The position numbers were made by a program, and so were the translations under genes. From the IMG/VR virus record IMGVR_UViG_3300035661_000001, positions 62,001 to 126,000 of that record: a DNA stretch of 64,000 bases; one strand, given 5' to 3'. Below are positions 18,120 to 39,126 of this stretch, one piece after another (the stretch's first letter is position 1; each line of letters begins with the position of its first letter). Below the pieces are notes generated by a model, which worked only from the letters and a program-made list of their open reading frames with translations, did no database searches and was not told where the DNA came from.

Positions 18120-18191
18120 GGTTCCATCGTTCAACGGCTAGGACGGCGGCTTCTAACACTGCCTATAAGGGTTCGACTCCCTTTGGAACCA
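18120..18191 (+). tRNA. tRNA with CTA anticodon in the canonical register (possible amber suppressor; alternatively a degenerate Arg-TCT)
   Basis: Acceptor GGTTCCA/TGGAACC, D stem GTTC/GGAC, loop TTCTAAC, T arm AAGGG-TTCGACT-CCCTT. Confidence 0.7.
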
Positions 18192-18213
18192 TCCATTTAA
18201 TTTAAGGGTTTAA

Positions 18214-22924: not shown

Positions 22925-22953
22925 AACGGCTACTAGGTTTAATAGTAGCCGTT
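22925..22953. terminator. Hairpin between convergent genes
   Basis: AACGGCTACTA / TAGTAGCCGTT. Confidence 0.65.
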
Positions 22954-22976
22954 GGTATTTATTAGGAAAGAGATAA

Positions 22977-23591: not shown

Positions 23592-23628
23592 GGTAATATT
23601 GTAATTTATGCACAGAGATTAGGTCAAT

Positions 23629-24462: not shown

Positions 24463-24477
24463 GAAAGAATTACTAAA

Positions 24478-24813
24478 ATGAATAAATTTTCATTACTATC
24501 TCTGTTGCTTGTAACTGGTTGCACATGGGGCAGCCCTCCATGCCCCGAACTATCGAACGATGATAAAGATGGAATATATCTTCGAAACTTAGGGTCTGTT
24601 GTAATTGATAATGAATCATGTTCAATTATTGAAACAATCAAAAAAACTGATTGTATTATCCAATAGGGTTGGAACCGCGGTCCATCTTGTAAAGGCGAAT
24701 GGATGAGTTGTAATACACAGGTTCTTACTCGATTTACTAAATGTCCTTCAGGAACATTTTCAAATACAATAACTTATTCTTCAGATAAGTTTCATAGAGA
24801 ACAAGTAGAATGA
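24478..24813 (+). CDS. Lipoprotein interrupted by an in-frame TAG at 24664-24666
   Basis: Lipobox VTGC; frame stays open 48 codons past the TAG, to a TGA overlapping the next ATG. Confidence 0.5.
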
Positions 24814-25319
24814 AATTCATATTTCTAGATTTTGATGGCGTATTAAACAGCGATAAATATTTCGACAGCCCTATTTTTAAAAATGAAACTAAAGGTATGG
24901 GCTGGAATGAGATTATGCTAATCGTTCATCATACCCATCTGGATCGAGATGCAATTCAACTGATAAATCAATTAGTTAACAAATCGGAAGCATCAGTAGT
25001 AGTCTCTTCTACTTGGAGACAAAAATATTCAATTGATGAATTGAATGAAATGTTAACTGCTCGTGGGGCAACTTTTACTATCATTGCAGCGACTCCTATA
25101 CATCGTTGCACTTATGTTGGTTGGGGCATGCAGGAAGTTATACGTGGCCATGAAATTCAAGATTATTTGAATGGAGTTGAAGCTCCAGTTCAATTTGTAA
25201 TTTTGGATGATATCAATAACATGGATCAATTAACCGATCATTTAGTGTTAACAGATGAATCGGTTGGTATTACATCAGCAGATATTGATAAAGCTTTACA
25301 AATCTTAAGCGAGGAATGA
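24810..25319 (+). CDS. HAD-superfamily phosphatase (Swiss-army-knife RNA repair-like HAD)
   Basis: 'IFLDFDGVLN', 'VVSSTWR', 'RGHEI..YL', 'FVILDD'. Confidence 0.85.
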   Translation: MKFIFLDFDGVLNSDKYFDSPIFKNETKGMGWNEIMLIVHHTHLDRDAIQLINQLVNKSEASVVVSSTWRQKYSIDELNEMLTARGATFTIIAATPIHRCTYVGWGMQEVIRGHEIQDYLNGVEAPVQFVILDDINNMDQLTDHLVLTDESVGITSADIDKALQILSEE

Positions 25320-25320
25320 T

Positions 25321-26529
25321 ATGGAAGAGAAAAAATCTGAACTTGATCATAAAGTTGTGCCTGCTGGACAGTCTATCTATGGCATCAATGTTATTGGGCT
25401 TTATTTACCTAGAGCATTAAAACATCATTTGGATACTGGCTCTCCTTTAGACGCCAAAAGTGTAAGTGGTATTCTTTCAATTCCTATTGAAGAGTTATGT
25501 AAATATCTAGAAGATAATGGTGGCGTACGAGGAGTATGCCAATACGATAGCGAATACAGCTATCTATGGAATTATTCTTTCTTAAACATCTCTTACAGTA
25601 AAAAAACTAGTTCTATTAGTATTACAGGATACTTAATGAGTGCTGAGCTAGTGGCGCTCATGAAATCAATTGAAACTAATTTCATATCTAAAAGTAAAAA
25701 GGATTTGGTATTTTCAATTGTTAAATCAAGCCTGGGGCTTGATATTAAAAACATGGGTAATGGATCGTCGCCGCTTATTAAAGATAATTATAATCCAGAA
25801 GTAATTTCTGATTTGGATATCGTTATTGAATCTTTCAAGAGTGCAACACCATCCGGAAGAATATGTATCCTTAATGGAGAGCCTGGTACTGGTAAGACAC
25901 ATTTAGTAAGATCAATGTTATCCGCTATTGATAATGTGTACCTGATTGTTCCTTCTAACCTCATTTCAGCATTAGATAGTCCCGAATTTCTACCTCTTTT
26001 GCTTAGGGTTAAAGAGACTCATGAAAAACCAATTATCTTAATTATTGAAGACGGTGATTCATGTTTAGCTCCAAGAAAGAGTGATAACATGTCTTCAATT
26101 ACATCTCTGTTAAATTTGAGTGACGGTATACTTGGGTCGATCCTTGATATCAAAATGATCATTACCACCAATGCCCAGATTAGAGATGTGGATCAAGCTA
26201 TTATGAGAGTTGGGCGGTTGTGCAAAAATATTGATGTTGGTGCATTGCCTTATGAGCGAGCTAATGCAAGATATCAGCAGTTGATGAAAAACTCAGAAGT
26301 AGTTTTGGATAAGAAAAAGTTTTATACTTTGGCAGAAGTATATAATATTTTCAATGGTAAAAATGAACGTCAGCCGGCGACACCTAATAATTCTAAACGC
26401 TCTATTGGTTTCCAATCAAATATTGGTTTTTCTATTCGTAGTCATGATGAAGTTGATGTCAAATATCATAAATTACTGAATGAAGCGGCTGCTTTAGAAG
26501 AAATAGCTAAGAAAAAAGGCTTGTTGTAG
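25321..26529 (+). CDS. AAA+ ATPase
   Basis: Walker A GEPGTGKT, Walker B IIEDGD, 'LLNLSDG', 'TTN', 'D.AIMRVGR'. Confidence 0.88.
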   Translation: MEEKKSELDHKVVPAGQSIYGINVIGLYLPRALKHHLDTGSPLDAKSVSGILSIPIEELCKYLEDNGGVRGVCQYDSEYSYLWNYSFLNISYSKKTSSISITGYLMSAELVALMKSIETNFISKSKKDLVFSIVKSSLGLDIKNMGNGSSPLIKDNYNPEVISDLDIVIESFKSATPSGRICILNGEPGTGKTHLVRSMLSAIDNVYLIVPSNLISALDSPEFLPLLLRVKETHEKPIILIIEDGDSCLAPRKSDNMSSITSLLNLSDGILGSILDIKMIITTNAQIRDVDQAIMRVGRLCKNIDVGALPYERANARYQQLMKNSEVVLDKKKFYTLAEVYNIFNGKNERQPATPNNSKRSIGFQSNIGFSIRSHDEVDVKYHKLLNEAAALEEIAKKKGLL

Positions 26530-26571
26530 ATTATAGTCTACCCATCGACAGATACTTAATGTCGATGTTGC

Positions 26572-26646
26572 CGGGCAAAAGGTCAGCTGGTTGCAGCCGG
26601 AGTTCTTATAAAGCTCTTGAGGTGGGTTCGATCCCCATTTGCCCGA
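26572..26646 (+). tRNA. tRNA-Ile(TAT), copy 1
   Basis: CGGGCAA/TTGCCCG; GAGTT-CTTATAA-AGCTC; GTGGG-TTCGATC-CCCAT. Confidence 0.85.
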
Positions 26647-26772
26647 CGGAAAATCGTATGAAAAATGATTGAACGATCATATCATTTAATGATATAGTAG
26701 ATGTGAAACATATTAGGTGTTTGGGTTTAATCCCCTCCATCCTCCCAATCCAGTATTTAATATGTTTTCATT

Positions 26773-26855
26773 GGGCGAGTGGTGGAATGGTAGACACAGC
26801 GGACTCAAAATCCGCCGGCAGCAATGTCATGAGGGTTCGACTCCCTCCTTGCCCA
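26773..26855 (+). tRNA. tRNA-Leu(CAA), normal long variable arm
   Basis: GCGGA-CTCAAAA-TCCGC, long variable arm, canonical T loop. Confidence 0.92.
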
Positions 26856-26901
26856 CAATCTTATAGATTCGTATAATAATTATGACTAAAAGGAATCATC
26901 C

Positions 26902-27255
26902 ATGAAAAGACTGCTACTTTCTCTATTAACTGGGTTGGTTTTAGTTGGTTGCGTTGCTCCCATCGAAGAGTCAAAAGAAGTGAATACGCCATCAGAAGAG
27001 GCGGTCGGTGTTCCATCTGATTATTATGTTAAAGATAAGGGCGCAGGCTATGACTGCCTGCCTCAGCTTGTGGAATTGAAACTTCCTAATGGTAATACCA
27101 AAATGGTTCTGATTCCTGTACTTTGCGATGAAAATCCATATTTAGATAAGGGTGATCCTTCTCCAGATGTAACGTCTCCGGAAGATGAGGTCACCGATTC
27201 TGATCCCACAAAATTAATGAAAAATAATGTGGAACCTGTTTCGCCGATGATTTGA
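26902..27255 (+). CDS. Putative lipoprotein
   Basis: Signal peptide with lipobox LVGC; AAGGA upstream. Confidence 0.6.
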   Translation: MKRLLLSLLTGLVLVGCVAPIEESKEVNTPSEEAVGVPSDYYVKDKGAGYDCLPQLVELKLPNGNTKMVLIPVLCDENPYLDKGDPSPDVTSPEDEVTDSDPTKLMKNNVEPVSPMI

Positions 27256-27305
27256 AAAATCATGTCATAAATCATGATATGTTTTAAATGTGGACATCAT
27301 GATTT

Positions 27306-27695
27306 ATGAATAGAAAAATCCTTGCTTTTTTTGAAGTTGCAGCTAGAACGGCTACCAGTAAAATGGATAGGCGTTCTTTTTTGCTTGGTGCCATTGGTAT
27401 TCGTAATGATGGTGTTATGGTACGATCTTTGAATTCCCCGACAGAAAACAAAAATCGTAAAGCTCATGCTGAATGTAAACTTTGCCGTAAGCTTGACTAT
27501 GGTGCTGAGGCAGTTTATGTTGCTAGGGTAAGATTTGATAATTTTCAATTCGGCATGGCTCGACCTTGCTCTTCTTGTAGAAAAATTCTGAAGACTAAAA
27601 AAGTAAAGAAAGTTTTCTACACCATTAGCCAGAGTTCTTATGGCGTAATTGATTTCGGTAAAAATACAGAAGTAATTTATGAAGATAACTTTTAA
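27306..27695 (+). CDS. Zn-dependent cytidine/adenosine deaminase-fold protein
   Basis: HAE ... PCxxC ('HAECKL', 'ARPCSSC'), 'KVFYT'. Confidence 0.85.
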   Translation: MNRKILAFFEVAARTATSKMDRRSFLLGAIGIRNDGVMVRSLNSPTENKNRKAHAECKLCRKLDYGAEAVYVARVRFDNFQFGMARPCSSCRKILKTKKVKKVFYTISQSSYGVIDFGKNTEVIYEDNF

Positions 27696-28125
27696 TAAAC
27701 TTTCTTTATGTAATGAAGAAAGAGATGACGTTCTTAAAGAACGTCATGCAATTATTTACTTCTTAAAAAATCAGGATATCGATACATCAATAATTGATAA
27801 ACTTCGTTCCGAACAACATTGGATATGTGGTGCACCATATAATACAAAAGGCTATTTCGATGAAGAAGCATTTTACAAAGTAATTGAAAATTTGAAATCT
27901 CATGGTTATGATAAAAGACCCCTTCATCAGTTCAAAGAAATTGACGACGATGAGTTTGTCTACGACGAAGAAATCGGAAATGCTTTAAACGAACGATCAA
28001 TGATTATTTCTTTCTTAAAGAGAAATAAGATTAGCTTAATTATTATCAATAGTTTACGGTCAGGCAAACATTGGGCGTTAGGATCTGCATATGGTCCAGG
28101 CGGGTGTTTTGATTATGGCGAATGA
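27679..28125 (+). CDS. Hypothetical protein with internal duplication
   Basis: Two 'L.ER..II.FLK...LRS..HW..G..Y...G.FD' units. Confidence 0.6.
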   Translation: MKITFNKLSLCNEERDDVLKERHAIIYFLKNQDIDTSIIDKLRSEQHWICGAPYNTKGYFDEEAFYKVIENLKSHGYDKRPLHQFKEIDDDEFVYDEEIGNALNERSMIISFLKRNKISLIIINSLRSGKHWALGSAYGPGGCFDYGE

Positions 28126-28160
28126 TATAAATTTTTAATTGAATACATGGTATAAAAATA

Positions 28161-29423
28161 ATGACACACGTATGCGTTATGTTTCCTTATCCGAGTGGTA
28201 ATGGATTGCACATTGGGCATTCTTATAACTATGCCGTTACAGATTCTTATTGCAGATATCTAAGGTTTACTGGAAAGGAAGTCTTTCAGCCTTTTGGATA
28301 TGATGCATTTGGTTTGCCCGCAGAAAATTATGCCCGTTCAGTTGGAGGTAATCCTAAAGATATTACCTATGCTAATATTGATAAGTTCAGAGAACAAATG
28401 GTTCATATGAATACTCAATATCAAGAGTTGCTTATTACATCTGATCCATCTTATCAAAAATGGACACAATGGTTGTTTACCAAGCTTTTGGAAAAAGGCT
28501 TGGCTTATAAATCTTTTGGTGATGTCAATTTTTGTCCTAGTTGTGATACTGTTTTGGCGAGGGAACAGGTAAAAAATGATCATTGTGAAAGATGTCATTC
28601 AAAAATTGAAATTAAACAATTGAATCAATGGTATTTCAAAATTACTGCATATAAAGATCGTTTGATTAAAAATTTGGATAAAATTGATTATCCAGCAAAA
28701 ACTATTAAGTCTCAGCGTAACTGGTTGGAAAATCTTCATGACTGGTGTGTGTCTCGTCAGCGTTCATGGGGATGCCCAATTCCAATTGAAGGCGAGACTG
28801 ATACTTTGGATACTTTTGTAGATAGTTCATTTTATTTTGTAAGATATTGTGATCCTACAAATGAAAACGAATTGTGCGCTAAAGATAAATACAAACAGGT
28901 AGATGTGTATGTGGGTGGGAATGAGCACGCGTGCATGCACTTGATTTATGCCAGATTCATACATATGTTTTTGTATGACCTCGGAATTGTTTCTGAAGAA
29001 GAGCCTTTCAAAAAAGTAATTCATCAGGGAATGATTTTGAATGACGGCGAAAAAATGTCCAAATCAAAAGGAAATGTTATTAATCCCGACTCATACGATC
29101 AGGATGAGTTGAGATTCTATTTGATGTTTATTGGTCATTATTTTGATGGCGGCTCTTGGTCTGATAAAAATATTAGTGGTGTGCGTAGATTTACGGCACG
29201 AACTAAAGAATGGTTGTCGAGAACAGGAGAAGAATCAATCAATGATCACCTGTCTAGATTTCAAGATCAGATTTTCAATTTTACTGAAAATTTCAAATTC
29301 AATCGAGTAGTCAGTGAGTTTATGATTTTGGTTAATCAACATCGAACCAAAAATATTACTGTCGCCGATAGAGATAGATTGATTTCTTTGTTGAAAATCT
29401 ATATGCCAGGATTTACTGTATGA
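28161..29423 (+). CDS. leuS: Minimal leucyl-tRNA synthetase (no CP1 editing, leucine-specific or C-terminal domain)
   Basis: 'MFPYPSG.GLHIGH', 'GYDAFGLPAEN', Zn knuckle, 'QRNW' joined to 'DW.VSRQR.WG.PIP', 'ETDTLDTFVDSS', 'GG.EHA..HL.YARF', 'KMSKSKGN'. Confidence 0.95.
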   Translation: MTHVCVMFPYPSGNGLHIGHSYNYAVTDSYCRYLRFTGKEVFQPFGYDAFGLPAENYARSVGGNPKDITYANIDKFREQMVHMNTQYQELLITSDPSYQKWTQWLFTKLLEKGLAYKSFGDVNFCPSCDTVLAREQVKNDHCERCHSKIEIKQLNQWYFKITAYKDRLIKNLDKIDYPAKTIKSQRNWLENLHDWCVSRQRSWGCPIPIEGETDTLDTFVDSSFYFVRYCDPTNENELCAKDKYKQVDVYVGGNEHACMHLIYARFIHMFLYDLGIVSEEEPFKKVIHQGMILNDGEKMSKSKGNVINPDSYDQDELRFYLMFIGHYFDGGSWSDKNISGVRRFTARTKEWLSRTGEESINDHLSRFQDQIFNFTENFKFNRVVSEFMILVNQHRTKNITVADRDRLISLLKIYMPGFTV

Positions 29424-30028
29424 ATATAAAAACTTTAATGTTTACATTAATTTTAATTGGTTGTTCACCTTCCGAAAAAGAATTAAATTTAACGGCAGAT
29501 AAAACAAGAATTAAAGTTTGTTCTCCTATAGGAGAGTTTGTTAGTTTACCAATTTATGATTGGAATACAGGAAGTCCATCTAAATATGGCTATAAATTAG
29601 CTACACAGTGTGACCCTAATAAAAAAGTCGAAATCTCTATTGAAAGAAATAATTGTTATAATCAGGCGCCATATGAGGTGATTATTACAAATACAACTGA
29701 TCGTAGTATTAAAAATACTACAATAAATATTGAGGCATATGAGCCAGGCATCTCTACTAATGTATTAGAAAATGATACAAGATATATGGAGATCGTATCT
29801 CCATTCATTATTAAATCAAATGAATTTAGTAAAAGTTGTACTGCCATATATTATGGTACAGAATATAAAGAAAATAAAATTGATTATGATTTAAAAGTTT
29901 TAGGGGCAAAGTATTTAGATAACCTGGATGCATATTCAAAAATTCCAAAAATGTTACCAGCATCTTATAAAGTAAAAATAAAAATTGTTAATGTGGAATT
30001 TTATTCTTCTGATAAAGAAATTCCATAG
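29420..30028 (+). CDS. Putative lipoprotein
   Basis: Lipobox LIGC. Confidence 0.55.
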   Translation: MNIKTLMFTLILIGCSPSEKELNLTADKTRIKVCSPIGEFVSLPIYDWNTGSPSKYGYKLATQCDPNKKVEISIERNNCYNQAPYEVIITNTTDRSIKNTTINIEAYEPGISTNVLENDTRYMEIVSPFIIKSNEFSKSCTAIYYGTEYKENKIDYDLKVLGAKYLDNLDAYSKIPKMLPASYKVKIKIVNVEFYSSDKEIP

Positions 30029-30039
30029 TCTAATTTCTC

Positions 30040-30435
30040 TCAATAAAAATCTTTTGCAGTTTTCTTCCTATGACAGTTAGCGCATCTTACTTCACATTTT
30101 TCTATTTCTTTTTCTAATTGTTTAATAGAGCTTCTGTTTATAATCATTACAGAAATATTTGATTTTTTTACATATTTGATATGATCAAATTCTAGACAAA
30201 CAGGATTCGATTCTCCACAATCAACACAAGGATGTTTTGTTAAATATTCATAAACAAAAAATTTTGTTTTATTTCGATATTCTTTAGTGTATCCTTTATC
30301 TCTACTACGATTATTATATATTTTATTATGGCATTTTTTACAATTATGACGACGAGAGATTTTATTTCTTAGTGGAAACTCAGTTATGTTTTTCTCACAC
30401 TTACAAATTCGGCAAATTTTAGTAATTTCATTCAT
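30040..30435 (-). mobile_element. HNH homing endonuclease
   Basis: 'HPCVDCGE....LEFDH...IEKCEVRCANCHRKKT'; probable start MNEITK. Confidence 0.85.
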
Positions 30436-30460
30436 ATTAAATATATAACATAGGCGCATA

Positions 30461-31477
30461 ATGAACAAAGATCTTTTATTAGCTAAACCCAATTTACCCA
30501 GCGGGTGGTTGGATACTTCCGTGGGCGAGCCATATTCTGTTAAAGAAAATTTATTTGAATATTTTAATTTATATGACTATAGCCTATCAATGAGAGATAG
30601 CTCAATATTTGAATATCCAAATCCTAGCGGCTATAAACCTTTAGTTGATTTATTGGAGAATCGATATGGTGCTCCAGTTATAATTACCAACGGTGCTAAA
30701 CAAGGATTAGCTGCAGCGTTATATACTTTGAAAAAAATGGGTAAACGAAAAGTAGGAATGAGAACTCCTTTCTGGGCTCTTCTTCCTCCGCTTATTCATA
30801 TGCAAGGTTTACACCCTACATCTTATGAAGAATCTGATTGTAATCTGTTGGTTATGCCTAATAACCCAGATGGATTTACTATGACTCCACATGACGTAAA
30901 TGAGTTTGTATCGGAGTGCATTGATAATCACAAACCATTGATTCATGATGCGGCATATTATAGCCATATTTATTTGCCAGAATCTTATCCTCTCGATCCC
31001 ATCGGTGATGTCCAACTCTTCTCTATGAGTAAGATGCTCGGTCTTTCTGGTCTTCGTTTAGGGTATGCGGTATGTCACAATCATATTTATTATAAGTTTA
31101 TCCAAGAATATATGGAAGCTATGACTGTGGGTGTTTCAAACATTTCACAAATTCTTTTGTTTGATCTTCTGACCCAGATGTCAGAGAATGGTGAATCATC
31201 AGAAGCATTTGAAAAAATGGCGTACCATTCAATTCAGAAATCTAAAAGTATTCTTAAACAAATAAACCCAGAAGTATTACTAGTACCAGATAATATAGAA
31301 AAAATTCCGGGTATGTTTGCTTGGTTGAAGATTGGAGAAAAAGCTAATTTCAAAAAATCCAAAGTTCATGTAGTAGAAGGAACTCATTTCGGAGTTCCTG
31401 GCATGGTACGAATTAATTTAGCTTTAGATCATCAGACTTTGCAAGAAGTAGTGGATCGTTTAAACTCTGTGGTGTAA
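30461..31477 (+). CDS. PLP-dependent aminotransferase class I/II
   Basis: 'ITNGAKQGL', 'PNNPDG', 'DAAY', 'SMSKMLGLSGLRLGY' (PLP Lys). Confidence 0.9.
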   Translation: MNKDLLLAKPNLPSGWLDTSVGEPYSVKENLFEYFNLYDYSLSMRDSSIFEYPNPSGYKPLVDLLENRYGAPVIITNGAKQGLAAALYTLKKMGKRKVGMRTPFWALLPPLIHMQGLHPTSYEESDCNLLVMPNNPDGFTMTPHDVNEFVSECIDNHKPLIHDAAYYSHIYLPESYPLDPIGDVQLFSMSKMLGLSGLRLGYAVCHNHIYYKFIQEYMEAMTVGVSNISQILLFDLLTQMSENGESSEAFEKMAYHSIQKSKSILKQINPEVLLVPDNIEKIPGMFAWLKIGEKANFKKSKVHVVEGTHFGVPGMVRINLALDHQTLQEVVDRLNSVV

Positions 31478-31829
31478 AATTATGTTTAATTCCATTAAAG
31501 AAAAACCATTAGCCGAGCAGTTCAAAACAATTGCTAAAATTTCAAGACAAAAACTTGAAGAAGAAGCTAAAATAGGATCTCCTAAGGATTTAAAGAAAGC
31601 TCAAAACCTTTATCAAAAAATTCTGAAAGAGATTAAAACTGAATCAGAAAAAGGTAATACTAATTTATTTTGGTCTAATCATTATATGTGGTTTGGTAGA
31701 TGGACAGTTTCTTTTTCTTTAGCATCAGCTATTTGTAATCTTTTGGAAAACGATGGATTCTCTACTAGCAAATGTCTATCTTCTAGTGATATCGGGCAAT
31801 ATTACATTTCAATTTATTGGTGATTTAAA

Positions 31830-32621
31830 ATGATCATTGACTGTCATACTCATATTGGACGAAATCAACATATAGATTTTTTAGTAGATCAACTACTAAA
31901 ATCTATGGATGAAGCAAAAATCGATAAATCTTTGGTATTTGCCGGCGAATTGAATAATATTTCAAATGAATATCTTCTTGATGCTATAGGTCCCCATCGC
32001 GACCGATTGATGGCGGTAGCTGCCGCGTCGCCTATGTCTAGGCGCGGCGGTCTGTTAGGAGAAGGAGTTAAAGAAGAAGCGAAAATTATTTCCGATTTGT
32101 ATGGCGAAGGAAAAATTGTTGCCTGTAAATTTTATACAGGCTATGATCATTTTTATCCTTATGATGAAATCATTCAAGATTATTTGATTAGTTTTGAAGA
32201 AATACATTGTCCGGTTATTTTCCATTCTGGAGATTGTTTGTGTTCAGCTAATCACGCTAAATTAAAATACGCACACCCACTTCATATCGATGAAGTTGCT
32301 GTAGATTATCCGGGCATTAATTTCATTATAGCTCACATTGGTTTTCCTTGGCATAGAGATGCGGCTGAGGTCGTATACAAAAACAAAAATGTTTTTGCAG
32401 ATATTTCTGGTTTTGTTTACGGATCATTTGGTCTCAATTCAGAATCTTCATTTCATAAAATGCTTGAAGAAGTTTTGGATATAACAGGTAATTCTGACAA
32501 ACTTTTGTTTGGAACAGATTGTCCAATTTCTGATCAGTCAAGTTATGTAATGGCAGCCAGCAAAGTTCTGCCAGAAGATATTTTTTGTAAGAATCCTAAG
32601 AAAGCATTTAATTTTAAATGA
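31830..32621 (+). CDS. Amidohydrolase family (TIM-barrel metal hydrolase)
   Basis: 'IDCHTH', 'FHSG', 'AHIG', 'LFGTD.P'. Confidence 0.88.
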   Translation: MIIDCHTHIGRNQHIDFLVDQLLKSMDEAKIDKSLVFAGELNNISNEYLLDAIGPHRDRLMAVAAASPMSRRGGLLGEGVKEEAKIISDLYGEGKIVACKFYTGYDHFYPYDEIIQDYLISFEEIHCPVIFHSGDCLCSANHAKLKYAHPLHIDEVAVDYPGINFIIAHIGFPWHRDAAEVVYKNKNVFADISGFVYGSFGLNSESSFHKMLEEVLDITGNSDKLLFGTDCPISDQSSYVMAASKVLPEDIFCKNPKKAFNFK

Positions 32622-33206
32622 TAATTTTTAAAGCCGATTTCTTCACTATTGGATCAGATGATGATTACAATCAAAAAGATTTTCTAAAGAATCTAGAAAA
32701 TAATTTCCAATATTTTAGTGCTACCCTTCATACTCATGATGACTATAATCACTATGATCCTTGCTATATATTTGAAAGCATAGATGACGCTTTAGATGAA
32801 GCCGCAAACCATGAGGCTGTTGGTGTAAAAATTTCTAAATTCGTTTTGGATGAGGATGATTGTAAAGAACTTTTAATTTCTAGGAATTTGAAAGTTCCTT
32901 CAGAAAAAGTATATTATTCTTATAATGAAACGACCCAAGAGTTGGAAGAATTCCAATTAAAAATTTTCCTGTAATAATCTATGTTAAAAAATATTAAAGT
33001 AGCTAAACTGATTGAAGAACTTCAGAAATATGATCAAGAATCTACAATTTCTGAAGTTAATTTATCTGGTGCAGAATTGATTTCTTGGAGAAATGATCCG
33101 AAGAACCCATCGTGGGTAAGATATAAAAACAGATATAAACATGATGACAAACCATGCTCATGTGGATATGTTCCATGGGATGGTTTACCTTTTTGAAAAT
33201 AAAATT

Positions 33207-34547
33207 ATGACTAGAGTTAGATTTGCTCCTAGCCCAACAGGAACGCTTCATGTTGGCGGGGTGCGTACGGCATTGTACAATTGGTTATGGGCTCGCAAAA
33301 ACGGTGGGAAATTTATTCTCCGCATTGAAGATACCGATCAAGTCCGTAATGATCCTGCTAGTTATAATAACATTTTAACAGCTCTGGATTGGCTTGGACT
33401 AGATTGGGATGAGGGTCCTAATGTTGGTGGAGATCATGGTCCTTATACTCAATCAGAGCGCCGTGACTTGTATAAAACTTGTGCTAATCTTTTAATAGAC
33501 TCCGGTAAAGCTTACCGTTGCAATTGTAGTTCTGACGATCTCGATCGCATGAGGCACGAATTTCGAGGCAGAAATGTTAAAGATACTTGGAAATACCCGG
33601 GCGTTTGTCGAGATAAAAACGTTTCTTCAGATGTACCTCATGTAGTGAGATTGATTGTTGATCCTGGGCAAGTCGTCTCATTTGACGATCTTGTTTTTGG
33701 TAATATCAAAACTCCTACATCCTCTCTTTATGATTTTGTTATCATGAGAGAGAATGGCGTGCCGCTGTACAATTTCGCGGCAGTCATTGATGATTACCTT
33801 ATGGATATTTCTTTGGTAGGTCGTGGTAAAGATCATTTGATTAATACTCCTCCTCAGATTCTAATCTACCAAGCTTTAGGTTGGAAGACTCCTGATTTTG
33901 CACATTTACCAATGTTGCTTAATCAAGATAATGTAAAACTCTCCAAGAGAGACGGCGCGGTCTCGGTGGATCAATTCAGAGAACTTGGGTTTTCAGCCAA
34001 TGGGCTTTTGAATTATTTAATGAGATTTGGTTGGGCTCATGGTGATAAAGAGCTTTTCTCCATGCAGGAGATGATTGATTTATTCTCTTGGGATAAATGT
34101 AAAAAATCAGATGGTAAGTTTGATTTCACAAAAGCCACGGCAATCAATGGTAAAAATCTTATCAATGATCAGTTGGTACCTGATAAGGTATATACTGATG
34201 ACTTGAAGAAGTTCATCCCTGATATTACCCCCGACAAAATAGCTCTAGTAAGGGCTAAGGCTAAAACTTACAAGGAGTCGGCAGCCTTCTTGTCATTCTT
34301 CACTGACGGCTCTCTTAATGGTCCCCCGGCGGATATGGATCCTGACGATAAGGCTCATGTCGAGACGTTTTTGAATATGTATCCTGTTTTGATTGTCAAT
34401 AAAGACAGAAATGCATTTTTGGACCTTACAAGGAAGTATTGTGAGTCTCATGATGTTCCTTTTGCAAGGATTTCTCAGGCGTTAAGATATTGGTTTACAC
34501 ACAGAACGGTTGGACCTGATATCTATCAGATAATGACTTATCTGTAA
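33207..34547 (+). CDS. gltX: Glutamyl-tRNA synthetase
   Basis: 'RVRFAPSPTGTLHVGG', 'RIEDTD', 'WDEGP', 'YTQSER', 'YNFA.VIDD', 'KLSKR'; true start is Met23 of the listed ORF. Confidence 0.95.
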   Translation: MTRVRFAPSPTGTLHVGGVRTALYNWLWARKNGGKFILRIEDTDQVRNDPASYNNILTALDWLGLDWDEGPNVGGDHGPYTQSERRDLYKTCANLLIDSGKAYRCNCSSDDLDRMRHEFRGRNVKDTWKYPGVCRDKNVSSDVPHVVRLIVDPGQVVSFDDLVFGNIKTPTSSLYDFVIMRENGVPLYNFAAVIDDYLMDISLVGRGKDHLINTPPQILIYQALGWKTPDFAHLPMLLNQDNVKLSKRDGAVSVDQFRELGFSANGLLNYLMRFGWAHGDKELFSMQEMIDLFSWDKCKKSDGKFDFTKATAINGKNLINDQLVPDKVYTDDLKKFIPDITPDKIALVRAKAKTYKESAAFLSFFTDGSLNGPPADMDPDDKAHVETFLNMYPVLIVNKDRNAFLDLTRKYCESHDVPFARISQALRYWFTHRTVGPDIYQIMTYL

Positions 34548-34583
34548 TATTTACCTCAGTCGCATTCACTAAAGGATATTTTT

Positions 34584-35774
34584 ATGGATCATCGCGAAAT
34601 CGGCAAGAGGATGGACCTTCTCATGTTCCATCCTCTTAGTCCTGGCTGTCCCATCTGGTTACCTGCTGGGAATTTCTTGTATTCTACCCTCTCGGATAAG
34701 ATTCGACAACTCAACAAGCGTAATGGATATGTTGAAGTCCGTACGCCTATGTTGTTTAAGTCGGATCTTTTCAAGATGTCAGGGCATATGGATCACTATC
34801 GTGATAATATGTATCTCATTGGAGACTCCGAAGATGAGAGCGCATTGAAACCCATGAACTGTCCTTGCCACATGTTGATTTTCAAATCAAAAAAGTGGTC
34901 ATATAGAGAGCTGCCTTATCGTATTCATGACCAAGGCGTTCTTCACAGAAATGAAACGTCCGGGTCATTGTCAGGCTTGATTAGGGTTAGATCTTTTTGT
35001 CAAGATGATGGTCACTTGTTTGTAACGAAGGATCAGTTAATTGGTGAAATTCAATCCATTATCAAGATGGTAAACCAGGTGTATCGAGTTTTTGATATGC
35101 CTGTCCGTGCTATGGTGTCAACCAGACCCGAATCATTCATGGGCGATCCTCTCTTGTGGGATCATGCCGAGTCTGTTTTACAAGAAATCCTCAAAAACAA
35201 TTCCATGGAATTTGAAATTGATGCTGGCGCCGGAGCCTTCTACGGTCCCAAGATTGATTTCTATATTAAAGATTCGTCTGGTCGAGAATTTCAGACGGCA
35301 ACGATTCAGCTTGATTTTCAGTTGCCATTGAAGTTTGACCTATCATATCAGGACGCTAGTAATGAATTGCTAGCCCCGATTGTTATTCATAGGGCAATTT
35401 TTGGATCTTTCGAAAGATTCATTGCTATTCTGTTAGAACATACGCAGGGTAAACTTCCACTTTGGCTGGCACCCATCCAAGGCGCGTTGATCCCAATCAA
35501 CTCAAGGAATGAGCAATTCTGCCGAGACCTGGCAGACAAATGGAATGCGGTTGGTGGTAGGTTTATTGTCAGTGACGATAACTCTCCGTTGGCGGGCAAG
35601 ATCAAACAAGCTCATGAAAAACTAATTCCTTATTCCCTAGTCGTTGGGGATCGGGAAGTTCAGGCGAATCAGGTTGCAATTAGAGAATTAAAATCCTCTA
35701 TGTCTCCTGATGATTTTTGGCAAAAACATATTGCAAATTCGTTAGAATTCAATTTTTATGACTCCCAAGACTAG
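34584..35774 (+). CDS. thrS: Threonyl-tRNA synthetase lacking the N-terminal TGS/editing domains
   Basis: Starts at 'DHREIGK'; 'KPMNCPCH', 'HRNE.SG.LSGL.RVR.F.QDD.H', 'GAFYGPKID', 'IHRAIFGSFERF', 'WLAP'. Confidence 0.95.
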   Translation: MDHREIGKRMDLLMFHPLSPGCPIWLPAGNFLYSTLSDKIRQLNKRNGYVEVRTPMLFKSDLFKMSGHMDHYRDNMYLIGDSEDESALKPMNCPCHMLIFKSKKWSYRELPYRIHDQGVLHRNETSGSLSGLIRVRSFCQDDGHLFVTKDQLIGEIQSIIKMVNQVYRVFDMPVRAMVSTRPESFMGDPLLWDHAESVLQEILKNNSMEFEIDAGAGAFYGPKIDFYIKDSSGREFQTATIQLDFQLPLKFDLSYQDASNELLAPIVIHRAIFGSFERFIAILLEHTQGKLPLWLAPIQGALIPINSRNEQFCRDLADKWNAVGGRFIVSDDNSPLAGKIKQAHEKLIPYSLVVGDREVQANQVAIRELKSSMSPDDFWQKHIANSLEFNFYDSQD

Positions 35775-36363
35775 AACGTCACCTGATGTATCTCTTTCTT
35801 CTGACAGCCATGTCGCAGCGATGAAGGATATCGATTCCCATCTGCGATCTTGGGCACATAATGTCAAAGATGATTTCAAAGCTTTGTCACCTGATGAGAT
35901 CAAGCTTCGTCTCAAGGAAACCGCCAATCCGTTTGCTGTGTGTTTCGAGAACTGGATTGGCGATTTCAATATCTCTACCGGAATGAGAAATGCCAATGCC
36001 TTTAATGCCAAAGAGGCATTTTACGTTGGCAACAAGCGGTGGGATAAGCGCGGAGCTGTTGGAGTATACAACTACACTGACATCAATTGGATTCCGACTA
36101 TGGATGACTTCTTGAAACTAAAGGAGAAGTACATTTTCATTGGAATTGATAATGTTCTCGGCTCTGTTCCATTGGCTGGATTTCGTTGGCAGCCCAATAC
36201 TCTTTTGATCTTCGGAGAAGAGGGTGTTGGTCTAACTCCGGAGACACAAGCTTTGTGTGAAGCAGTGGTTGAAATTGAAATGTACGGATCTATTCGCAGT
36301 CTGAATTGTGGAACAGCGTCTGGCATTATCATGCACGATTTTGTTTCAAAAATGAGAGTTTGA
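35758..36363 (+). CDS. SpoU/TrmH-family RNA 2'-O-methyltransferase
   Basis: 'N.GMRNA.AF', 'LIFGEEGVGL', 'IEMYGSIRSLN...ASGI.MH'. Confidence 0.9.
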   Translation: MTPKTRTSPDVSLSSDSHVAAMKDIDSHLRSWAHNVKDDFKALSPDEIKLRLKETANPFAVCFENWIGDFNISTGMRNANAFNAKEAFYVGNKRWDKRGAVGVYNYTDINWIPTMDDFLKLKEKYIFIGIDNVLGSVPLAGFRWQPNTLLIFGEEGVGLTPETQALCEAVVEIEMYGSIRSLNCGTASGIIMHDFVSKMRV

Positions 36364-36727
36364 ATAATGCAAAAATTAGGGATAAATAGGGTTGAAGTAT
36401 TAATTATCAATACTCGACATTGCCCTTATGAAGTAACAGAAAGGCTTCATGAATTAGACGTTCATGATGGTCATAGACCAAGCTTTAGACTTTACATAAG
36501 CGAACTGTCCCCATATGGAGATGAAGATTGGTCTCGCATTTCTATGGAAAACATTAAGTTCTATTGGGAAAACCAGTGCGCCAGACTTGGCGAATATAAA
36601 TACAATGGGACATTAGAAGAGTTTATTAAAGATTATGGTTTAACCATTGATAAATGGTTAATTGATTCTGGTATAGATTTGACAGGAATCAAACATATCT
36701 TTTTTACTTATTAGGATTTAGATTTAT

Positions 36728-37130
36728 ATGCGTAACGCTGCCGTGATGTTTGTCATCAAAAATGGTTTGATTCTAGGTGTGTCTCGTGGTCTTGGTGATC
36801 CTAAGTTTGGTTTGCCTGGTGGTAAATGTGAGCCGGGGGGAAACTCTTATGGCAGCATCTATTCGAGAAACTTTTGAAGAAACTGGTTTGACGGTTGATT
36901 CTTGCTCTTTTATTTTTGAGCAAATCGAATTACGTCACACACCAGAAGGAGAAGATTTTAATACCCATTGTTTTTACGCTCACTCGTGGTCCGGGACTAT
37001 TGTCCCATCACACGAGGGAGACGTGCGTTGGGTAACGGTGGATGAATTAAAACGTGGATCGTTTCCAGAGTATAATTTAAAATCTCTGGAAGTTCTCAAA
37101 ACTTTGTATCCAAATATTAAACTGAAATAA
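36728..37130 (+). CDS. Nudix hydrolase with a +1 indel in the G-run at about 36835
   Basis: Removing one G gives 'GLPGGKCEPGETLMAASIRETFEETG'. Confidence 0.8.
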
Positions 37131-37138
37131 GGATTATT

Positions 37139-37798
37139 ATGAATAAATATCTTTTTGGCTTGGCACTTTCTATTGGTTTGATGTCAGCTGGTTGTGATGC
37201 CAGTAAACACATGGAAGACATGGGCTTCAAGAAGGGTGAAGGTGTAGTAGAAAAGGGTGTTATTAAATATGATACTCTGGTCGAAAAAGATGAAATCTGT
37301 AATGAGTCCTGGAGTAATTATGAGGCACAGTTACAGAGACGTGCTGACCTGATTCCGATGTTAGTTAATACTGTAAAAGGTTACGCTACACATGAACAAG
37401 AAACTTTGACTAAGGTCATGGAAGCCCGCGCCGCCGCAACTCAAATCAAAATGACGTCTGAGGATTTGACCAATCCAGAGAAGATGGCGGCGTTTCAGAA
37501 AGCTCAAGATCAGATGAAGGGAAGCTTGTCACGACTGATGGTTGTTCAGGAAAATTATCCTACTTTGAAAGCTGATGGTAGATTTCATGATTTGATGGTT
37601 TCTATGGAAGGGACCGAGAATAGAATTCTTATTGCTCGTAAGAATTACAACAAGTCTGTCATGGAGTATAACGTTGAACTCCGTAGAGTGAGCGGTAAAG
37701 CTATCAATCCTGTTACTGGTTTTGAGTTCAAGCCTCGATTGCCCTTCTCGGCTGATGAGAATGCCAAAGTTGCCCCCAAAGTGGATTTTAGCAAATGA
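37139..37798 (+). CDS. lemA: LemA family protein (lipoprotein signal)
   Basis: 'WSNYEAQLQRRADLIP.LVNTVKGYA.HE', 'ENYPTLKA', 'EGTENRI..AR..YN'. Confidence 0.93.
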   Translation: MNKYLFGLALSIGLMSAGCDASKHMEDMGFKKGEGVVEKGVIKYDTLVEKDEICNESWSNYEAQLQRRADLIPMLVNTVKGYATHEQETLTKVMEARAAATQIKMTSEDLTNPEKMAAFQKAQDQMKGSLSRLMVVQENYPTLKADGRFHDLMVSMEGTENRILIARKNYNKSVMEYNVELRRVSGKAINPVTGFEFKPRLPFSADENAKVAPKVDFSK

Positions 37799-37998
37799 GT
37801 ATTGTTATATTTATCCTTTTGTTTCTATTCTTTATATTACTTATTGCAAGTGGAGCAATCGGAGTATTACTCGAAATAGTCTTCGCTATAATAGGATTAT
37901 TTACTGGAGGATCCGTAGGCTCTGACAAATCATCAGATGATGATTCGGGATTTGGCGGCGGCGGTTCAGACGGAGGGGGATCAGATGATTCGTTTTAA
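37795..37998 (+). CDS. Small membrane protein with a TPM-like Gly/Ser/Asp tail
   Basis: Two hydrophobic segments then 'DSGFGGGGSDGGGSDDSF'. Confidence 0.55.
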   Translation: MSIVIFILLFLFFILLIASGAIGVLLEIVFAIIGLFTGGSVGSDKSSDDDSGFGGGGSDGGGSDDSF

Positions 37999-39085
37999 AT
38001 ATCTTCCTGCTGCATTATTAACAATTGCATTATTGCTTGTTAGTAATGCACTATTAGCTTTCACTCCACCTCCAGCACCCATCCCTCCGAAAAGCTATGT
38101 AGCTGATGTAGCTAATAAATTATCCTCTAGTGATTTGTTGAAACTTAATTCACAAATTAACAAGGTTAATAGAAGTAGTGCGAATGAAATAGCTGTGCTA
38201 ATTATCCAATCACTTGAAAATGAGTCTATTCCAGAAGTAGCTCATACAACTTTTAATACTTGGAAAGTTGGCAAAAAAGGATTAGATAATGGAATCTTAA
38301 TTGTTATTGCTGTAGATGACAAACGCTCTAGAATAGAAGTAGGTCGTGGAGTTGAAGGTGATTTAACTGATCTTCAATCAAATGATATTATCAGAACTAA
38401 ATTAAATCCTCTTTTGAAAAGCGGTGATTTTTATACTGGATTATCAGACACAATTGATGCTATCTCTAAAACTATCGAAAGTCGTAAGGGGCAGAAAGTA
38501 ATTCCACCTTCCGCTCCAGCGCCAACAAACCTTCCCACTGGTGCGGCAGGTTGTTCAGTTTCGGAAATTGGAATTAATGATGGTGGTGTTGCAATGTTTT
38601 CATTTATTTTCTTTATTGGTTTCATGATTATTGTTTATCTGATTTGGAAGGCAAGTGAATACAAAGATGGTACTTCCCATTATTATTCTACTCCTCCGAC
38701 TCCACCACCCCCGCCGGTCACAACCCCGCGACGGAGACGATCAGATGTTCCGACATATGGACATATCACGCCTCTTCCCAAAGAGGTTTATTATCCACCA
38801 TATAGACCATCTTCTATCTCTGCTTCTATTGCAAATTATTCTCCACCAGAACCGTATGTTGCTCCGGTGCCAGAACCAATTAAAGAGGAAGAGTCTGATT
38901 ATGTTGCGCCAGTCATTGCAGCTGTAGTTTTGTCTTCATTGTTTGAGTCTAACGATGATTCAAGAGAGAATTCATATTCTCCTCCAGAGGAAGTATACTC
39001 TCCACCATCAAGTGATTCCGTATCAGATGATACTGGATTTTCTGGTGGAGAATCAGATGGTGGCGGCTCAGATGAATCTTGGTGA
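37985..39085 (+). CDS. TPM domain (YgcG-like) membrane protein
   Basis: 'YVADVA', 'IAVLII.SL', 'WKVGKKG.DNGIL', 'RIEVGRGVEG.LTD'; tail 'GFSGGESDGGGS'. Confidence 0.9.
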   Translation: MIRFKYLPAALLTIALLLVSNALLAFTPPPAPIPPKSYVADVANKLSSSDLLKLNSQINKVNRSSANEIAVLIIQSLENESIPEVAHTTFNTWKVGKKGLDNGILIVIAVDDKRSRIEVGRGVEGDLTDLQSNDIIRTKLNPLLKSGDFYTGLSDTIDAISKTIESRKGQKVIPPSAPAPTNLPTGAAGCSVSEIGINDGGVAMFSFIFFIGFMIIVYLIWKASEYKDGTSHYYSTPPTPPPPPVTTPRRRRSDVPTYGHITPLPKEVYYPPYRPSSISASIANYSPPEPYVAPVPEPIKEEESDYVAPVIAAVVLSSLFESNDDSRENSYSPPEEVYSPPSSDSVSDDTGFSGGESDGGGSDESW

Positions 39086-39090: not shown

Positions 39091-39126
39091 AATTGGGGAA
39101 GGATTCGAATCCTTCCCCAATTTTTG
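39091..39126 (+). terminator. Intrinsic terminator after the LemA-TPM operon
   Basis: AATTGGGGAAGGATT / AATCCTTCCCCAATT followed by a T-run. Confidence 0.75.

What the first reader, a model, noticed from the sequence alone, without database searches (positions are those of the whole stretch)
33207..36363. GluRS - editing-less ThrRS - TrmH operon: a second synthetase stripped of proofreading
Seen: GluRS, a 396-aa ThrRS that starts at the catalytic core, and an overlapping SpoU methylase. Established: the ThrRS N2 domain removes Ser-tRNA(Thr); editing-less ThrRS occur in yeast mitochondria and some archaea. Inference: parallel loss of editing in LeuRS and ThrRS suggests selection for compact or error-tolerant synthetases. 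No Thr or intact Glu tRNA is in this window; GluRS may be non-discriminating and charge the tRNA-Gln(UUG) or the CUA tRNA.
Basis: partly seen in the sequence, partly recalled or inferred. Interest (0 to 1): 0.65.

Follow-up and report, generated by a model that had tools for sequence, protein, structure and literature searches.

The report
Editing-less ThrRS inserted in a huge phage
A 452-kb phage carries an apparently working threonyl-tRNA synthetase that naturally lacks its proofreading domain; it belongs to an old, apparently phage-borne family of such short enzymes and was inserted between a conserved GluRS–methylase gene pair, so it is not a loss that happened in this genome.

Summary
The three genes are GluRS (33207-34547), a 396-aa ThrRS (34584-35774) that starts exactly at the catalytic core, and a SpoU-family methylase (35758-36363) that overlaps the ThrRS by 17 nt. 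The window lies in a complete 451,956-bp phage genome.

The ThrRS keeps all three zinc ligands, motifs 2 and 3 and the anticodon-binding domain. It equals the engineered E. coli ΔN-ThrRS (residues 243-612). The phage genome holds no N2/SAD, TGS, archaeal ThrRS-ED, YbaK/ProX or DTD domain.

The truncation did not happen here. Among the best 120 relatives, 47 are short forms that start at the same DHR(E)IG motif. They fall on one side of one branch (SH-aLRT 99), are deeply diverged (median 55% identity), and lie in huge-phage-like contexts in all six places examined.

Four related phage lineages have GluRS next to SpoU with no ThrRS between them, so this ThrRS was inserted into a conserved block. 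Calling the three genes a functional operon is not supported, and neither is the name "TrmH".

The phage encodes tRNA-Thr(UGU) and tRNA-Glu(UUC) outside the window. Whether the GluRS is non-discriminating could not be settled.

Verdict: a new variant of a known kind, of moderate interest.

The parts
33207..34547 (+). Glutamyl-tRNA synthetase, 446 aa (alternative starts at 33180 and 33141). It is part of a block conserved across this phage family.
   Evidence: TIGR00464 403 bits (cut-off 290); PF00749 and PF19269. HIGH-type HVGG and KLSKR motifs are visible in the translation. Sister-phage orthologues are 55-65% identical.
34548..34583 (+). 36-nt spacer with the AAAGGA ribosome-binding site of the ThrRS gene; left junction of the inferred insertion.
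   Evidence: Sequence read. In sister phages the GluRS stop is followed within 4-26 nt by the SpoU start.
34584..35774 (+). Threonyl-tRNA synthetase, 396 aa: catalytic core plus anticodon-binding domain only, with no N1 (TGS) or N2 (editing) domain.
   Evidence: TIGR00418 451 bits, profile positions 172-546 of 565. Aligns to E. coli ThrRS 243-612. Matches PHROG 18916 at positions 243-614 of 643. Belongs to the 47-member short group.
34824..35441 (+). Class II catalytic core (Pfam tRNA-synt_2b, aa 81-286). Zinc-ligand codons: C93 (34860-34862), H144 (35013-35015), H269 (35388-35390). Motif 2 HRNE is at aa 121-124 and motif 3 GSFER at aa 274-278.
   Evidence: All 83 columns that are at least 98% identical across the 119 ThrRS sequences are kept in the query.
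35484..35699 (+). HGTP-type anticodon-binding domain (aa 301-372).
   Evidence: PF03129, E = 2.2e-11.
35758..36363 (+). SpoU/TrmH-superfamily RNA 2'-O-methyltransferase, 201 aa, substrate unknown. Its start overlaps the ThrRS 3' end by 17 nt (35758-35774).
   Evidence: PF00588, E = 4.9e-19. All NCBIfam equivalogs score far below their cut-offs. Best PDB match is 7edc (TrmH), E = 1e-6, with the three SpoU motifs aligned. It sits in a virus-dominated Atlas cluster. It is 60% identical to the sister-phage orthologue from residue 1.
34578..34586 (+). Left copy of the 9-nt direct repeat ATTTTTATG, ending in the ThrRS start codon.
   Evidence: family D13, spacing 1174 nt. About 4 exact 9-mers are expected by chance in this stretch, so this is only a possible junction microhomology.
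35752..35760 (+). Right copy of ATTTTTATG, ending in the SpoU start codon.
   Evidence: family D13.

Best explanation
The 396-aa protein is a working, minimal bacterial-type threonyl-tRNA synthetase made of the catalytic core plus the anticodon-binding domain. It is the natural equivalent of the laboratory ΔN-ThrRS of E. coli.

It belongs to an old lineage of N-terminally truncated ThrRS found so far only in huge-phage-like contexts, where it moves between genomes as single-gene cargo. In this phage it was inserted into the slot between GluRS and a SpoU methylase, two genes that are directly adjacent in related phages.

During infection it most likely charges the phage's own tRNA-Thr(UGU), and probably host tRNA-Thr, to keep threonine decoding supplied.

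With no editing site it cannot itself clear Ser-tRNA(Thr). The phage therefore either tolerates a roughly per-mille Ser-for-Thr error during its short infection cycle, or relies on the host's full-length ThrRS to recapture and hydrolyse the mischarged tRNA.

Shown: the domain content, intact active-site residues, absence of recognisable editing modules from the genome, clade membership, and the synteny that implies insertion.
Inferred: catalytic activity, which tRNAs it charges, and tolerance or host-supplied editing.
For: - Family and boundaries.
- All 83 near-invariant ThrRS columns are kept, including zinc ligands C93, H144 and H269 and motifs 2 and 3. Only four conservative positions separate short from long forms.
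- No N2 domain in the genome: an HMM built from 72 long relatives gives best E = 0.55, against 2.8e-174 for the core and 1e-53 on the Phosso positive control. No SAD, TGS, ThrRS-ED, YbaK or DTD.
- 47 of the best 120 relatives are short and start at the same DHR(E)IG motif. They fall on one side of one branch, SH-aLRT 99, with median 55% identity among themselves.
- Six sampled contexts of short ThrRS are all huge-phage-like and all different.
- Four related lineages show Amidohydro_2 - GluRS - (nothing or one small ORF) - SpoU - NUDIX. The query is nested among them in a GluRS tree rooted on cellular sequences.
- The phage tRNA-Thr(UGU) has G1-C72, C2-G71, G35 and U36.
- Metagenome contigs span both junctions.
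- From the literature: zinc excludes Val but not Ser, N2 clears Ser-tRNA(Thr), and class II enzymes can recapture released mischarged tRNA (PMC7373986). An editing-impaired ThrRS can be rescued in trans by an editing-competent one (PMC4787780).
Against: - No biochemical or expression data. All runs that hold the stretch are DNA.
- The host is unknown, so host-supplied editing is untested.
- The ThrRS is not a compositional outlier from its neighbours (GC 0.42, against 0.41 and 0.44), so the insertion is not recent, or it came from a similar genome.
- The insertion polarity rests on a GluRS gene tree with moderate support at the inner nodes (82-94).
- The 9-nt junction repeat could be chance.
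- An unrecognised editing factor among the many ORFs with no family hits cannot be excluded.
Confidence: 0.68

Rival explanations
1. One reading: this phage itself stripped the editing domains from a host-derived ThrRS, and from LeuRS in parallel, under selection for compactness or error tolerance.
For: Three of the phage's four synthetases lack accessory domains: ThrRS, the LeuRS-like protein without CP1, and the core-only MetRS.
Against: The same truncation point is shared by 47 deeply diverged relatives that fall on one side of one branch, so the loss long predates this genome. Sister phages lack ThrRS in this slot. The short group does not nest inside any sampled cellular lineage.
Confidence: 0.05
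2. Editing is not missing but supplied by an unrecognised phage-encoded trans-editing factor, or by a more accurate active site (for example pre-transfer hydrolysis of Ser-AMP, as I recall has been reported for yeast mitochondrial ThrRS).
For: Most ORFs in the genome have no family assignment. Crenarchaea pair a short ThrRS with a free-standing editing protein (PMC7373986).
Against: Searches for N2/SAD, ThrRS-ED, YbaK/ProX and DTD were all negative, while the control genomes were positive. A second huge phage with a short ThrRS also has no SAD. Only four conservative substitutions distinguish short from long cores, and none is at a known active-site position.
Confidence: 0.12
3. The short ThrRS has a mainly non-canonical role, for example a decoy or replacement that escapes a host toxin or inhibitor aimed at host ThrRS, or a binder of tRNA-like RNA. 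Bulk charging would not be its main job.
For: The N-terminal region of E. coli ThrRS is needed for its translational repressor function (PMC7373986), so a ΔN form would be free of that circuit. Phages often carry replacements for targeted host factors (general knowledge).
Against: Full conservation of the amino-acid, ATP and zinc sites and of the anticodon-binding domain. The thrS equivalog score is above its cut-off. A cognate phage tRNA-Thr is present. No thrS leader or other regulatory RNA was found in the window.
Confidence: 0.08
4. Deliberate mistranslation: the editing-less enzyme is kept because Ser-for-Thr substitution diversifies or regulates phage or host proteins.
For: The short form has persisted for a long time (median 55% identity within the clade). 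Adaptive mistranslation has precedents in Mycoplasma and under stress (PMC7373986).
Against: There is no positive evidence. The expected error rate is low, and the host ThrRS would counteract it.
Confidence: 0.05
5. The gene is a decaying fragment (pseudogene) of a full-length ThrRS.
For: It is 40% shorter than canonical bacterial ThrRS.
Against: A clean start with a ribosome-binding site exactly at the domain boundary. No internal stops. Every invariant residue is kept. The same architecture appears in 47 diverged homologues.
Confidence: 0.02

Closest known systems
E. coli ΔN-ThrRS (engineered, residues 242-642; PDB 1evk/1evl/1fyf/1kog)
   Same: Same boundaries: query residues 2-370 align to E. 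coli 243-612 with essentially no gaps. The zinc ligands, motifs and anticodon-binding domain are the same. From my own knowledge (Dock-Bregeon et al. 2000, not retrieved here), the engineered enzyme is active and mischarges serine.
   Different: The phage protein is natural, about 40% identical to the E. coli enzyme by my estimate from the bit scores (no exact figure was computed), and has been maintained across a deep phage clade. It is not a laboratory construct.
Crenarchaeal ThrRS-cat with free-standing ThrRS-ed (e.g. Aeropyrum pernix, PDB 3a31/3a32)
   Same: The thrS gene is naturally shortened and lacks the N-terminal editing domain (PMC7373986).
   Different: Archaea supply editing from a separate ThrRS-ed gene, and none is present in this phage. 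The phage core is bacterial-type: 302 bits to the E. coli enzyme against 197 bits to 3a31.
Yeast mitochondrial ThrRS MST1 (PDB 3ugq)
   Same: A natural ThrRS without an editing domain, with core plus anticodon-binding domain; 304 bits to the query.
   Different: It is an organellar enzyme and the sole ThrRS of its compartment. The phage enzyme works beside a host ThrRS that presumably edits.
Tupanvirus mini-AlaRS (PMC10036535)
   Same: A virus-encoded synthetase that has lost its editing domain (homologous to ThrRS N2) and other appended domains, and is still active.
   Different: It comes from a eukaryotic giant virus, concerns a different amino acid, and is a single case related to its host's enzyme. 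The phage ThrRS belongs to a large, old clade that appears to be virus-specific.
Anabaena T2 ThrRS and Mycoplasma ThrRS (degenerate editing domains; PMC4787780, PMC7373986)
   Same: Natural ThrRS with impaired proofreading. For T2, editing is supplied in trans by a second, competent ThrRS, which is the model proposed here for host rescue.
   Different: Those enzymes keep a degenerate N2 domain. Here the domain is absent altogether.
Huge-phage synthetases in general (Al-Shayeb et al. 2020, PMC7162821)
   Same: Huge phages carry up to 15 synthetases and many tRNAs, thought to charge phage tRNAs. One genome from the same accession series (LR756504.1) carries a short 386-aa ThrRS.
   Different: In the passages I searched, that paper does not mention the domain architecture or the loss of editing.

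Membership tests
Threonyl-tRNA synthetase (class IIa, NCBIfam TIGR00418 thrS) | Whole-protein score above the curated equivalog cut-off | tested here: met
   451.2 bits against a cut-off of 383.65, despite missing the first 171 profile positions.
Threonyl-tRNA synthetase (class IIa, NCBIfam TIGR00418 thrS) | Active-site zinc ligands (E. coli Cys334, His385, His511) and class II motifs 2 and 3 | tested here: met
   C93, H144 and H269, with HRNE and GSFER, all lie in columns at least 98% conserved across 119 ThrRS.
Threonyl-tRNA synthetase (class IIa, NCBIfam TIGR00418 thrS) | C-terminal HGTP anticodon-binding domain | tested here: met
   PF03129, E = 2.2e-11, aa 301-372.
Threonyl-tRNA synthetase (class IIa, NCBIfam TIGR00418 thrS) | Aminoacylation of tRNA-Thr with threonine | not testable with these tools
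   Needs an enzyme assay. A cognate phage tRNA-Thr(UGU) with G1-C72, C2-G71, G35 and U36 exists.
Canonical bacterial ThrRS architecture (N1 TGS, N2 editing, core, anticodon-binding domain) | N2 editing domain (with SAD, PF07973) in cis | tested here: not met
   No Pfam or NCBIfam match. The protein starts at E. coli residue 243. The upstream 36 nt are non-coding.
Canonical bacterial ThrRS architecture (N1 TGS, N2 editing, core, anticodon-binding domain) | N1 TGS domain | tested here: not met
   No PF02824 match in the protein or anywhere in the genome. The nearest cellular relatives (about 580 aa) also lack TGS.
Split ThrRS system (ThrRS-cat plus free-standing editing protein, crenarchaeal type) | A separate gene encoding a ThrRS editing domain (DTD-like ThrRS-ED or N2-like) | tested here: not met
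   PF08915, PF02580 and PF07973 are absent from the genome. The N2 HMM gives best E = 0.55.
Short ThrRS group found in phage-like contexts (defined here) | Starts at the DHR(E)IG motif and groups with the other short forms on core columns only | tested here: met
   47 rows on one side of a branch, SH-aLRT 99. The query sits with P0002 and P0003.
Short ThrRS group found in phage-like contexts (defined here) | Carried by phage genomes, not cells | tested here: inconclusive
   Six of six sampled contexts are phage-like, and the query's own genome is a DTR virus record. The other 40 members were not examined.
TrmH, tRNA (Gm18) 2'-O-methyltransferase | Score above the TrmH equivalog cut-off | tested here: not met
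   NF008295 scores 31.3 bits against a cut-off of 227. RlmB scores slightly higher at 35.8 bits against 160.
SpoU (SPOUT) methyltransferase superfamily, PF00588 | Pfam gathering score and the three SpoU motifs | tested here: met
   69.3 bits against a cut-off of 29.7. Motifs 1-3 align to 7edc.
Bacterial glutamyl-tRNA synthetase (TIGR00464 gltX_bact) | Score above the equivalog cut-off, with HIGH and KMSKS-type motifs | tested here: met
   403 bits against a cut-off of 290. HVGG and KLSKR are in the translation.
Non-discriminating GluRS | Loss of the anticodon-domain residue that reads C36 (Arg358 in T. thermophilus, from my own knowledge), or charging of tRNA-Gln | tested here: inconclusive
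   The C-terminal domain alone finds no PDB sequence. The best PDB hit is T. maritima GluRS2, deposited fused to GatC (3al0), but GluRS1 scores nearly the same. The phage has no GlnRS or GatB.
Conserved GluRS-ThrRS-SpoU operon | The same gene order in related genomes | tested here: not met
   Four related lineages have GluRS-SpoU without ThrRS. Six other short ThrRS genes have unrelated neighbours.

The most novel reading that the evidence does not exclude
Huge phages have maintained over long evolutionary time, and possibly evolved more than once, a dedicated proofreading-free ThrRS that spreads as a single-gene cassette. LR756504.1's short ThrRS groups with a full-length phage enzyme. This would mean the phage translation toolkit is systematically built from editing-less minimal synthetases, here ThrRS, LeuRS and MetRS. 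Fidelity modules would then be dispensable or even counter-selected in viruses, either because the host edits in trans or because a per-mille error rate does not matter within one infection cycle.
Probability: 0.3. Interest if true: 0.6.

Novelty: new variant of a known kind. Interest (0 to 1): 0.45.

Why it matters
Proofreading by ThrRS is treated as nearly universal. The known exceptions are an organelle, a split archaeal system and genome-reduced parasites. A deep clade of bacterial-type ThrRS that has lived without any editing domain, found so far only in phage-like contexts, is a natural experiment on how much translational accuracy a virus needs. It also supplies many compact (about 390 aa), diverse ThrRS cores for enzymology and for engineering orthogonal pairs. 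For phage genomics it shows that synthetase genes are mobile cargo dropped into variable slots. They are not host-derived operons, so they are poor markers of the host.

Tried and rejected
- The search for related loci with the single ThrRS protein in viral contigs found nothing. Contexts were obtained through the look-up of encoding contigs instead.
- TAG, TGA or TAA recoding was considered because of the CUA tRNA. Standard-code ORFs already cover 89% of the genome and no region collapses, so table 11 was kept.
- GC and GC3 do not mark the ThrRS as foreign relative to GluRS and SpoU, so composition gives no support for a recent transfer.
- The GluRS anticodon-binding domain alone finds no PDB sequence, so the discriminating residue could not be mapped.
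- Rfam found only tRNAs in the window: no T-box and no thrS leader.
- Promoter and terminator scans were near the shuffled expectation. The one strong terminator-like hairpin is at 39091-39122, downstream of the block.
- Four literature searches found no paper describing short or editing-less phage ThrRS. Absence from this library does not prove it is undescribed.
- Several 'phage' ThrRS hits in INPHARED (Acinetobacter MD-2021a, Vibrio p16) are full-length thrS genes in thrS-infC(-rpmI-rplT) arrangements. I take these to be host-derived and did not use them.
- Independent truncation in LR756504.1: the free tree separates it from the short clade, but the AU test does not reject a single clade (p = 0.103). 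This is reported only as a possibility.
- The depth spike and the 70-nt 'joint' near 33241-33471 in the read laying come from other organisms' contigs matching the conserved GluRS HIGH region. They are not a feature of this phage.
- The big representative search, structure prediction and complex prediction were not run. Sequence evidence was already decisive for family and architecture.
Full report
**Setting.** The window is bases 62,001-126,000 of a 451,956-bp virus record with direct terminal repeats, rated complete. It is a huge phage with 41 predicted tRNAs. Standard-code ORFs cover 89% of the genome and no region suggests stop-codon reassignment, so table 11 was used throughout. The same stretch occurs in microbial-mat and sediment metagenomes. 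Single contigs from two runs span it at 39× and 25× with no differences, although those runs may be the source sample. A third run holds identical fragments, one of which crosses the ThrRS/SpoU junction. No contig skips the ThrRS.

**Observation.**
- GluRS, 33207-34547: TIGR00464 403 bits against a cut-off of 290. Its N-terminus is MTRVRFAPSPTGTLHVGG.
- ThrRS, 34584-35774, 396 aa: TIGR00418 451 bits against a cut-off of 384, covering only profile positions 172-546 of 565. Pfam finds tRNA-synt_2b and HGTP_anticodon and nothing else.
- SpoU-family methylase, 35758-36363: PF00588. It overlaps the ThrRS by 17 nt, and its start is confirmed by homology from residue 1.
- Only 36 non-coding bases, carrying an AAAGGA ribosome-binding site, precede the ThrRS.

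**What the ThrRS is.**
- Residues 2-370 align without notable gaps to E. coli ThrRS 243-612. That is the boundary of the engineered ΔN-ThrRS used for crystallography (1evk/1evl).
- In an alignment of 119 ThrRS, the query keeps every one of the 83 columns that are at least 98% conserved. These include the zinc ligands C93, H144 and H269, motif 2 (HRNE) and motif 3 (GSFER).
- It is therefore an intact catalytic core plus anticodon-binding domain, not a fragment.
- The phage encodes a tRNA-Thr(UGU) at genome 205,455-205,528 with G1-C72, C2-G71, G35 and U36. From my own knowledge, these are the bacterial identity elements.

**Is proofreading supplied elsewhere?**
- The genome has no SAD, TGS, archaeal ThrRS-ED, YbaK/ProX or DTD domain. 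The same searches found these domains in between 6 and all 14 of the named control genomes, depending on the family.
- An HMM of the N-terminal region built from 72 full-length relatives finds nothing in the six-frame translation (best E = 0.55). The core HMM scores 2.8e-174, and the N2 HMM scores 1e-53 on the full-length ThrRS of Sinorhizobium phage Phosso.

**Where the short form comes from.**
- Of the best 120 database relatives, 47 are 378-413 aa and 72 are 580-651 aa. The remaining one is a 501-aa partial sequence, which I left out of the tree.
- All the short ones begin at the same DHR(E)IG motif.
- On core columns only, they fall on one side of one branch (SH-aLRT 99). A single change of architecture explains all 47.
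- They are as diverged from each other (median 55% identity) as the long forms are (57%).
- The best-scoring long relatives are named Candidatus Sericytochromatia and already lack TGS. The short group is not nested inside them.
- Six short-ThrRS contexts from different subclades, on contigs of 34 to 670 kb, all look like huge phages. They show dense small ORFs without family hits, weak gp23 or gp32 matches, HNH, ribosomal S21 and other synthetases. None shares neighbours with another.
- The truncation is therefore old and has been inherited within a gene pool that, in every context examined, is phage-borne.
- PHROG 18916, the phage ThrRS family in PHROGs v4, is a 643-position profile, of which the query matches positions 243-614. 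Phosso carries a 640-aa enzyme. Both architectures therefore exist in phages.
- The 636-kb phage LR756504.1 has a 386-aa ThrRS starting at MEDHRIIG and no SAD anywhere in its genome. In the tree it groups with Phosso's full-length enzyme (SH-aLRT 99), which hints at a second, independent truncation. It is a long branch, and the AU test does not reject one clade for all short forms (p = 0.103).

**The 'operon'.**
- The closest GluRS relatives (55-65% identity) lie on contigs of 448 and 466 kb and on several shorter ones.
- In all four lineages whose context could be read, the order is Amidohydro_2 - GluRS - (nothing, a 59-aa ORF or a 110-aa ORF) - SpoU - NUDIX, followed in most of them by LemA and/or TPM. 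There is never a ThrRS in that slot.
- In a GluRS tree rooted on cellular sequences, the phage family is one clade (SH-aLRT 100). The query is nested inside it, next to P0126.
- One gain in the query's lineage therefore explains the data, whereas loss would have to have happened at least three times.
- GluRS-SpoU is the conserved pair, the junction between them is a variable cargo slot, and the ThrRS is the cargo here.
- A 9-nt direct repeat, ATTTTTATG, sits exactly at the ThrRS and SpoU start codons, 1174 nt apart. It may be junction microhomology, but about four such repeats are expected by chance.
- The ThrRS is not compositionally distinct from its neighbours.

**How it most likely works.** Established biochemistry, summarised in PMC7373986: the active-site zinc excludes valine but not serine. 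The N2 site removes Ser-tRNA(Thr). Class II synthetases release product quickly and can recapture mischarged tRNA. PMC4787780 shows that an editing-impaired ThrRS can be covered in trans by a competent one. I infer three things:
- The phage enzyme charges phage and host tRNA-Thr.
- It makes some Ser-tRNA(Thr).
- The error is either tolerated during the short infection or removed by the host's own full-length ThrRS.

None of this was measured. The rival explanations and their odds are listed in that field.

- The neighbouring 420-aa protein is LeuRS-like. It scores 398 bits to TIGR00396, matched in four pieces, with no CP1/PF13603 and no Anticodon_1 hit.
- A 462-aa MetRS core lies outside the window.
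- Three of the phage's four synthetases are therefore minimal forms, which fits 'compact synthetases' as a pattern. A sister phage, however, has a class I enzyme of about 1010 aa with Anticodon_1, so the pattern is not universal in the family.
- 'TrmH' is not supported. The best NCBIfam scores are 31-36 bits against cut-offs of 160-227. The protein sits in a virus-dominated SpoU cluster, and its substrate is unknown.
- On GluRS specificity: the phage has tRNA-Glu(UUC), tRNA-Gln(UUG and CUG) and a CUA tRNA whose D-arm and U1-A72 pair resemble the phage tRNA-Gln. It has no GlnRS and no GatB. The nearest cellular GluRS are from Myxococcota at 45-49% identity. The discriminating residue could not be aligned, so this question stays open.

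**Comparison and novelty.**
- Editing-less ThrRS are known from yeast mitochondria, from crenarchaea (with a separate editing protein) and as the engineered E. coli ΔN form. Degenerate editing domains occur in Mycoplasma and in Anabaena T2. A virus-encoded mini-AlaRS without an editing domain is known from Tupanvirus (PMC10036535).
- Synthetases in huge phages are well known (PMC7162821), but the passages I retrieved there do not discuss domain loss. Four literature searches found no description of a short phage ThrRS.
- The finding is therefore a new variant of a known kind. It is bacterial-type, lies in phage-like contexts wherever examined, is clade-wide, and has no recognisable replacement for editing.
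- It is not a peculiarity of this genome and not an operon.

Noticed in passing
window 28161-29423 and 29420-30028: A LeuRS-like protein of only 420 aa: TIGR00396 398 bits, below the cut-off of 548, matched in four pieces, with no CP1 editing domain and no Anticodon_1 hit. A 202-aa ORF with no family hit follows it and may or may not be the missing C-terminal part.
   Followed up: partly
L006:1336-2724 (genome 144,835-146,223, outside the window): A 462-aa MetRS core (NF008900 positions 5-482 of 648) without the C-terminal appended domain. With it, the phage carries at least four synthetases, three of them in minimal form.
   Followed up: partly
window 18119-18195: An amber-suppressor tRNA (anticodon CUA). 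It shares its D-arm almost exactly with the phage tRNA-Gln(UUG), has U1-A72, and has one extra base that allows an 8-bp acceptor stem. The genome shows no sign of TAG recoding, so what it is used for is unclear.
   Followed up: partly
window 31830-39085; L007:6020-10582; L008:4462-9668: The block Amidohydro_2 - GluRS - SpoU - NUDIX - (LemA) - TPM is conserved across at least five phage lineages. The GluRS|SpoU junction acts as a variable slot holding nothing, a 59-aa ORF, a 110-aa ORF, or ThrRS. In L008 a LAGLIDADG endonuclease gene sits just after SpoU. Why GluRS and this methylase stay together is unexplained.
   Followed up: partly
window 39091-39122: A strong terminator-like hairpin (14-bp stem followed by a T-run) directly after the TPM-domain gene. 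It may be the end of the transcription unit that contains the three genes.
   Followed up: no
window 55703-62832: A tRNA-rich region with 12 of the window's 16 tRNA genes, interspersed with small ORFs. tRNA-Phe(GAA) occurs twice within it. tRNA-Ile(UAU) occurs once here (62090) and again at 26572.
   Followed up: no
genome 42-243 and 451,744-451,945 (outside the window): A pair of tRNA-Arg(UCU) genes lies in each terminal repeat, so the repeat itself carries tRNA genes.
   Followed up: no
window 1-8000 versus 22000-32000: GC content falls from 0.49 at the left edge of the window to about 0.32 in the middle. ORF GC3 across the genome has a very wide spread (mean 0.30, sd 0.15), which suggests a mosaic of genes of different origin.
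   Followed up: no
L009:1050-1565: In another huge phage that carries a short ThrRS, a 171-aa ORF matches only part of a HisRS-type class II core. It is another apparently fragmentary or minimal synthetase-like gene.
   Followed up: no
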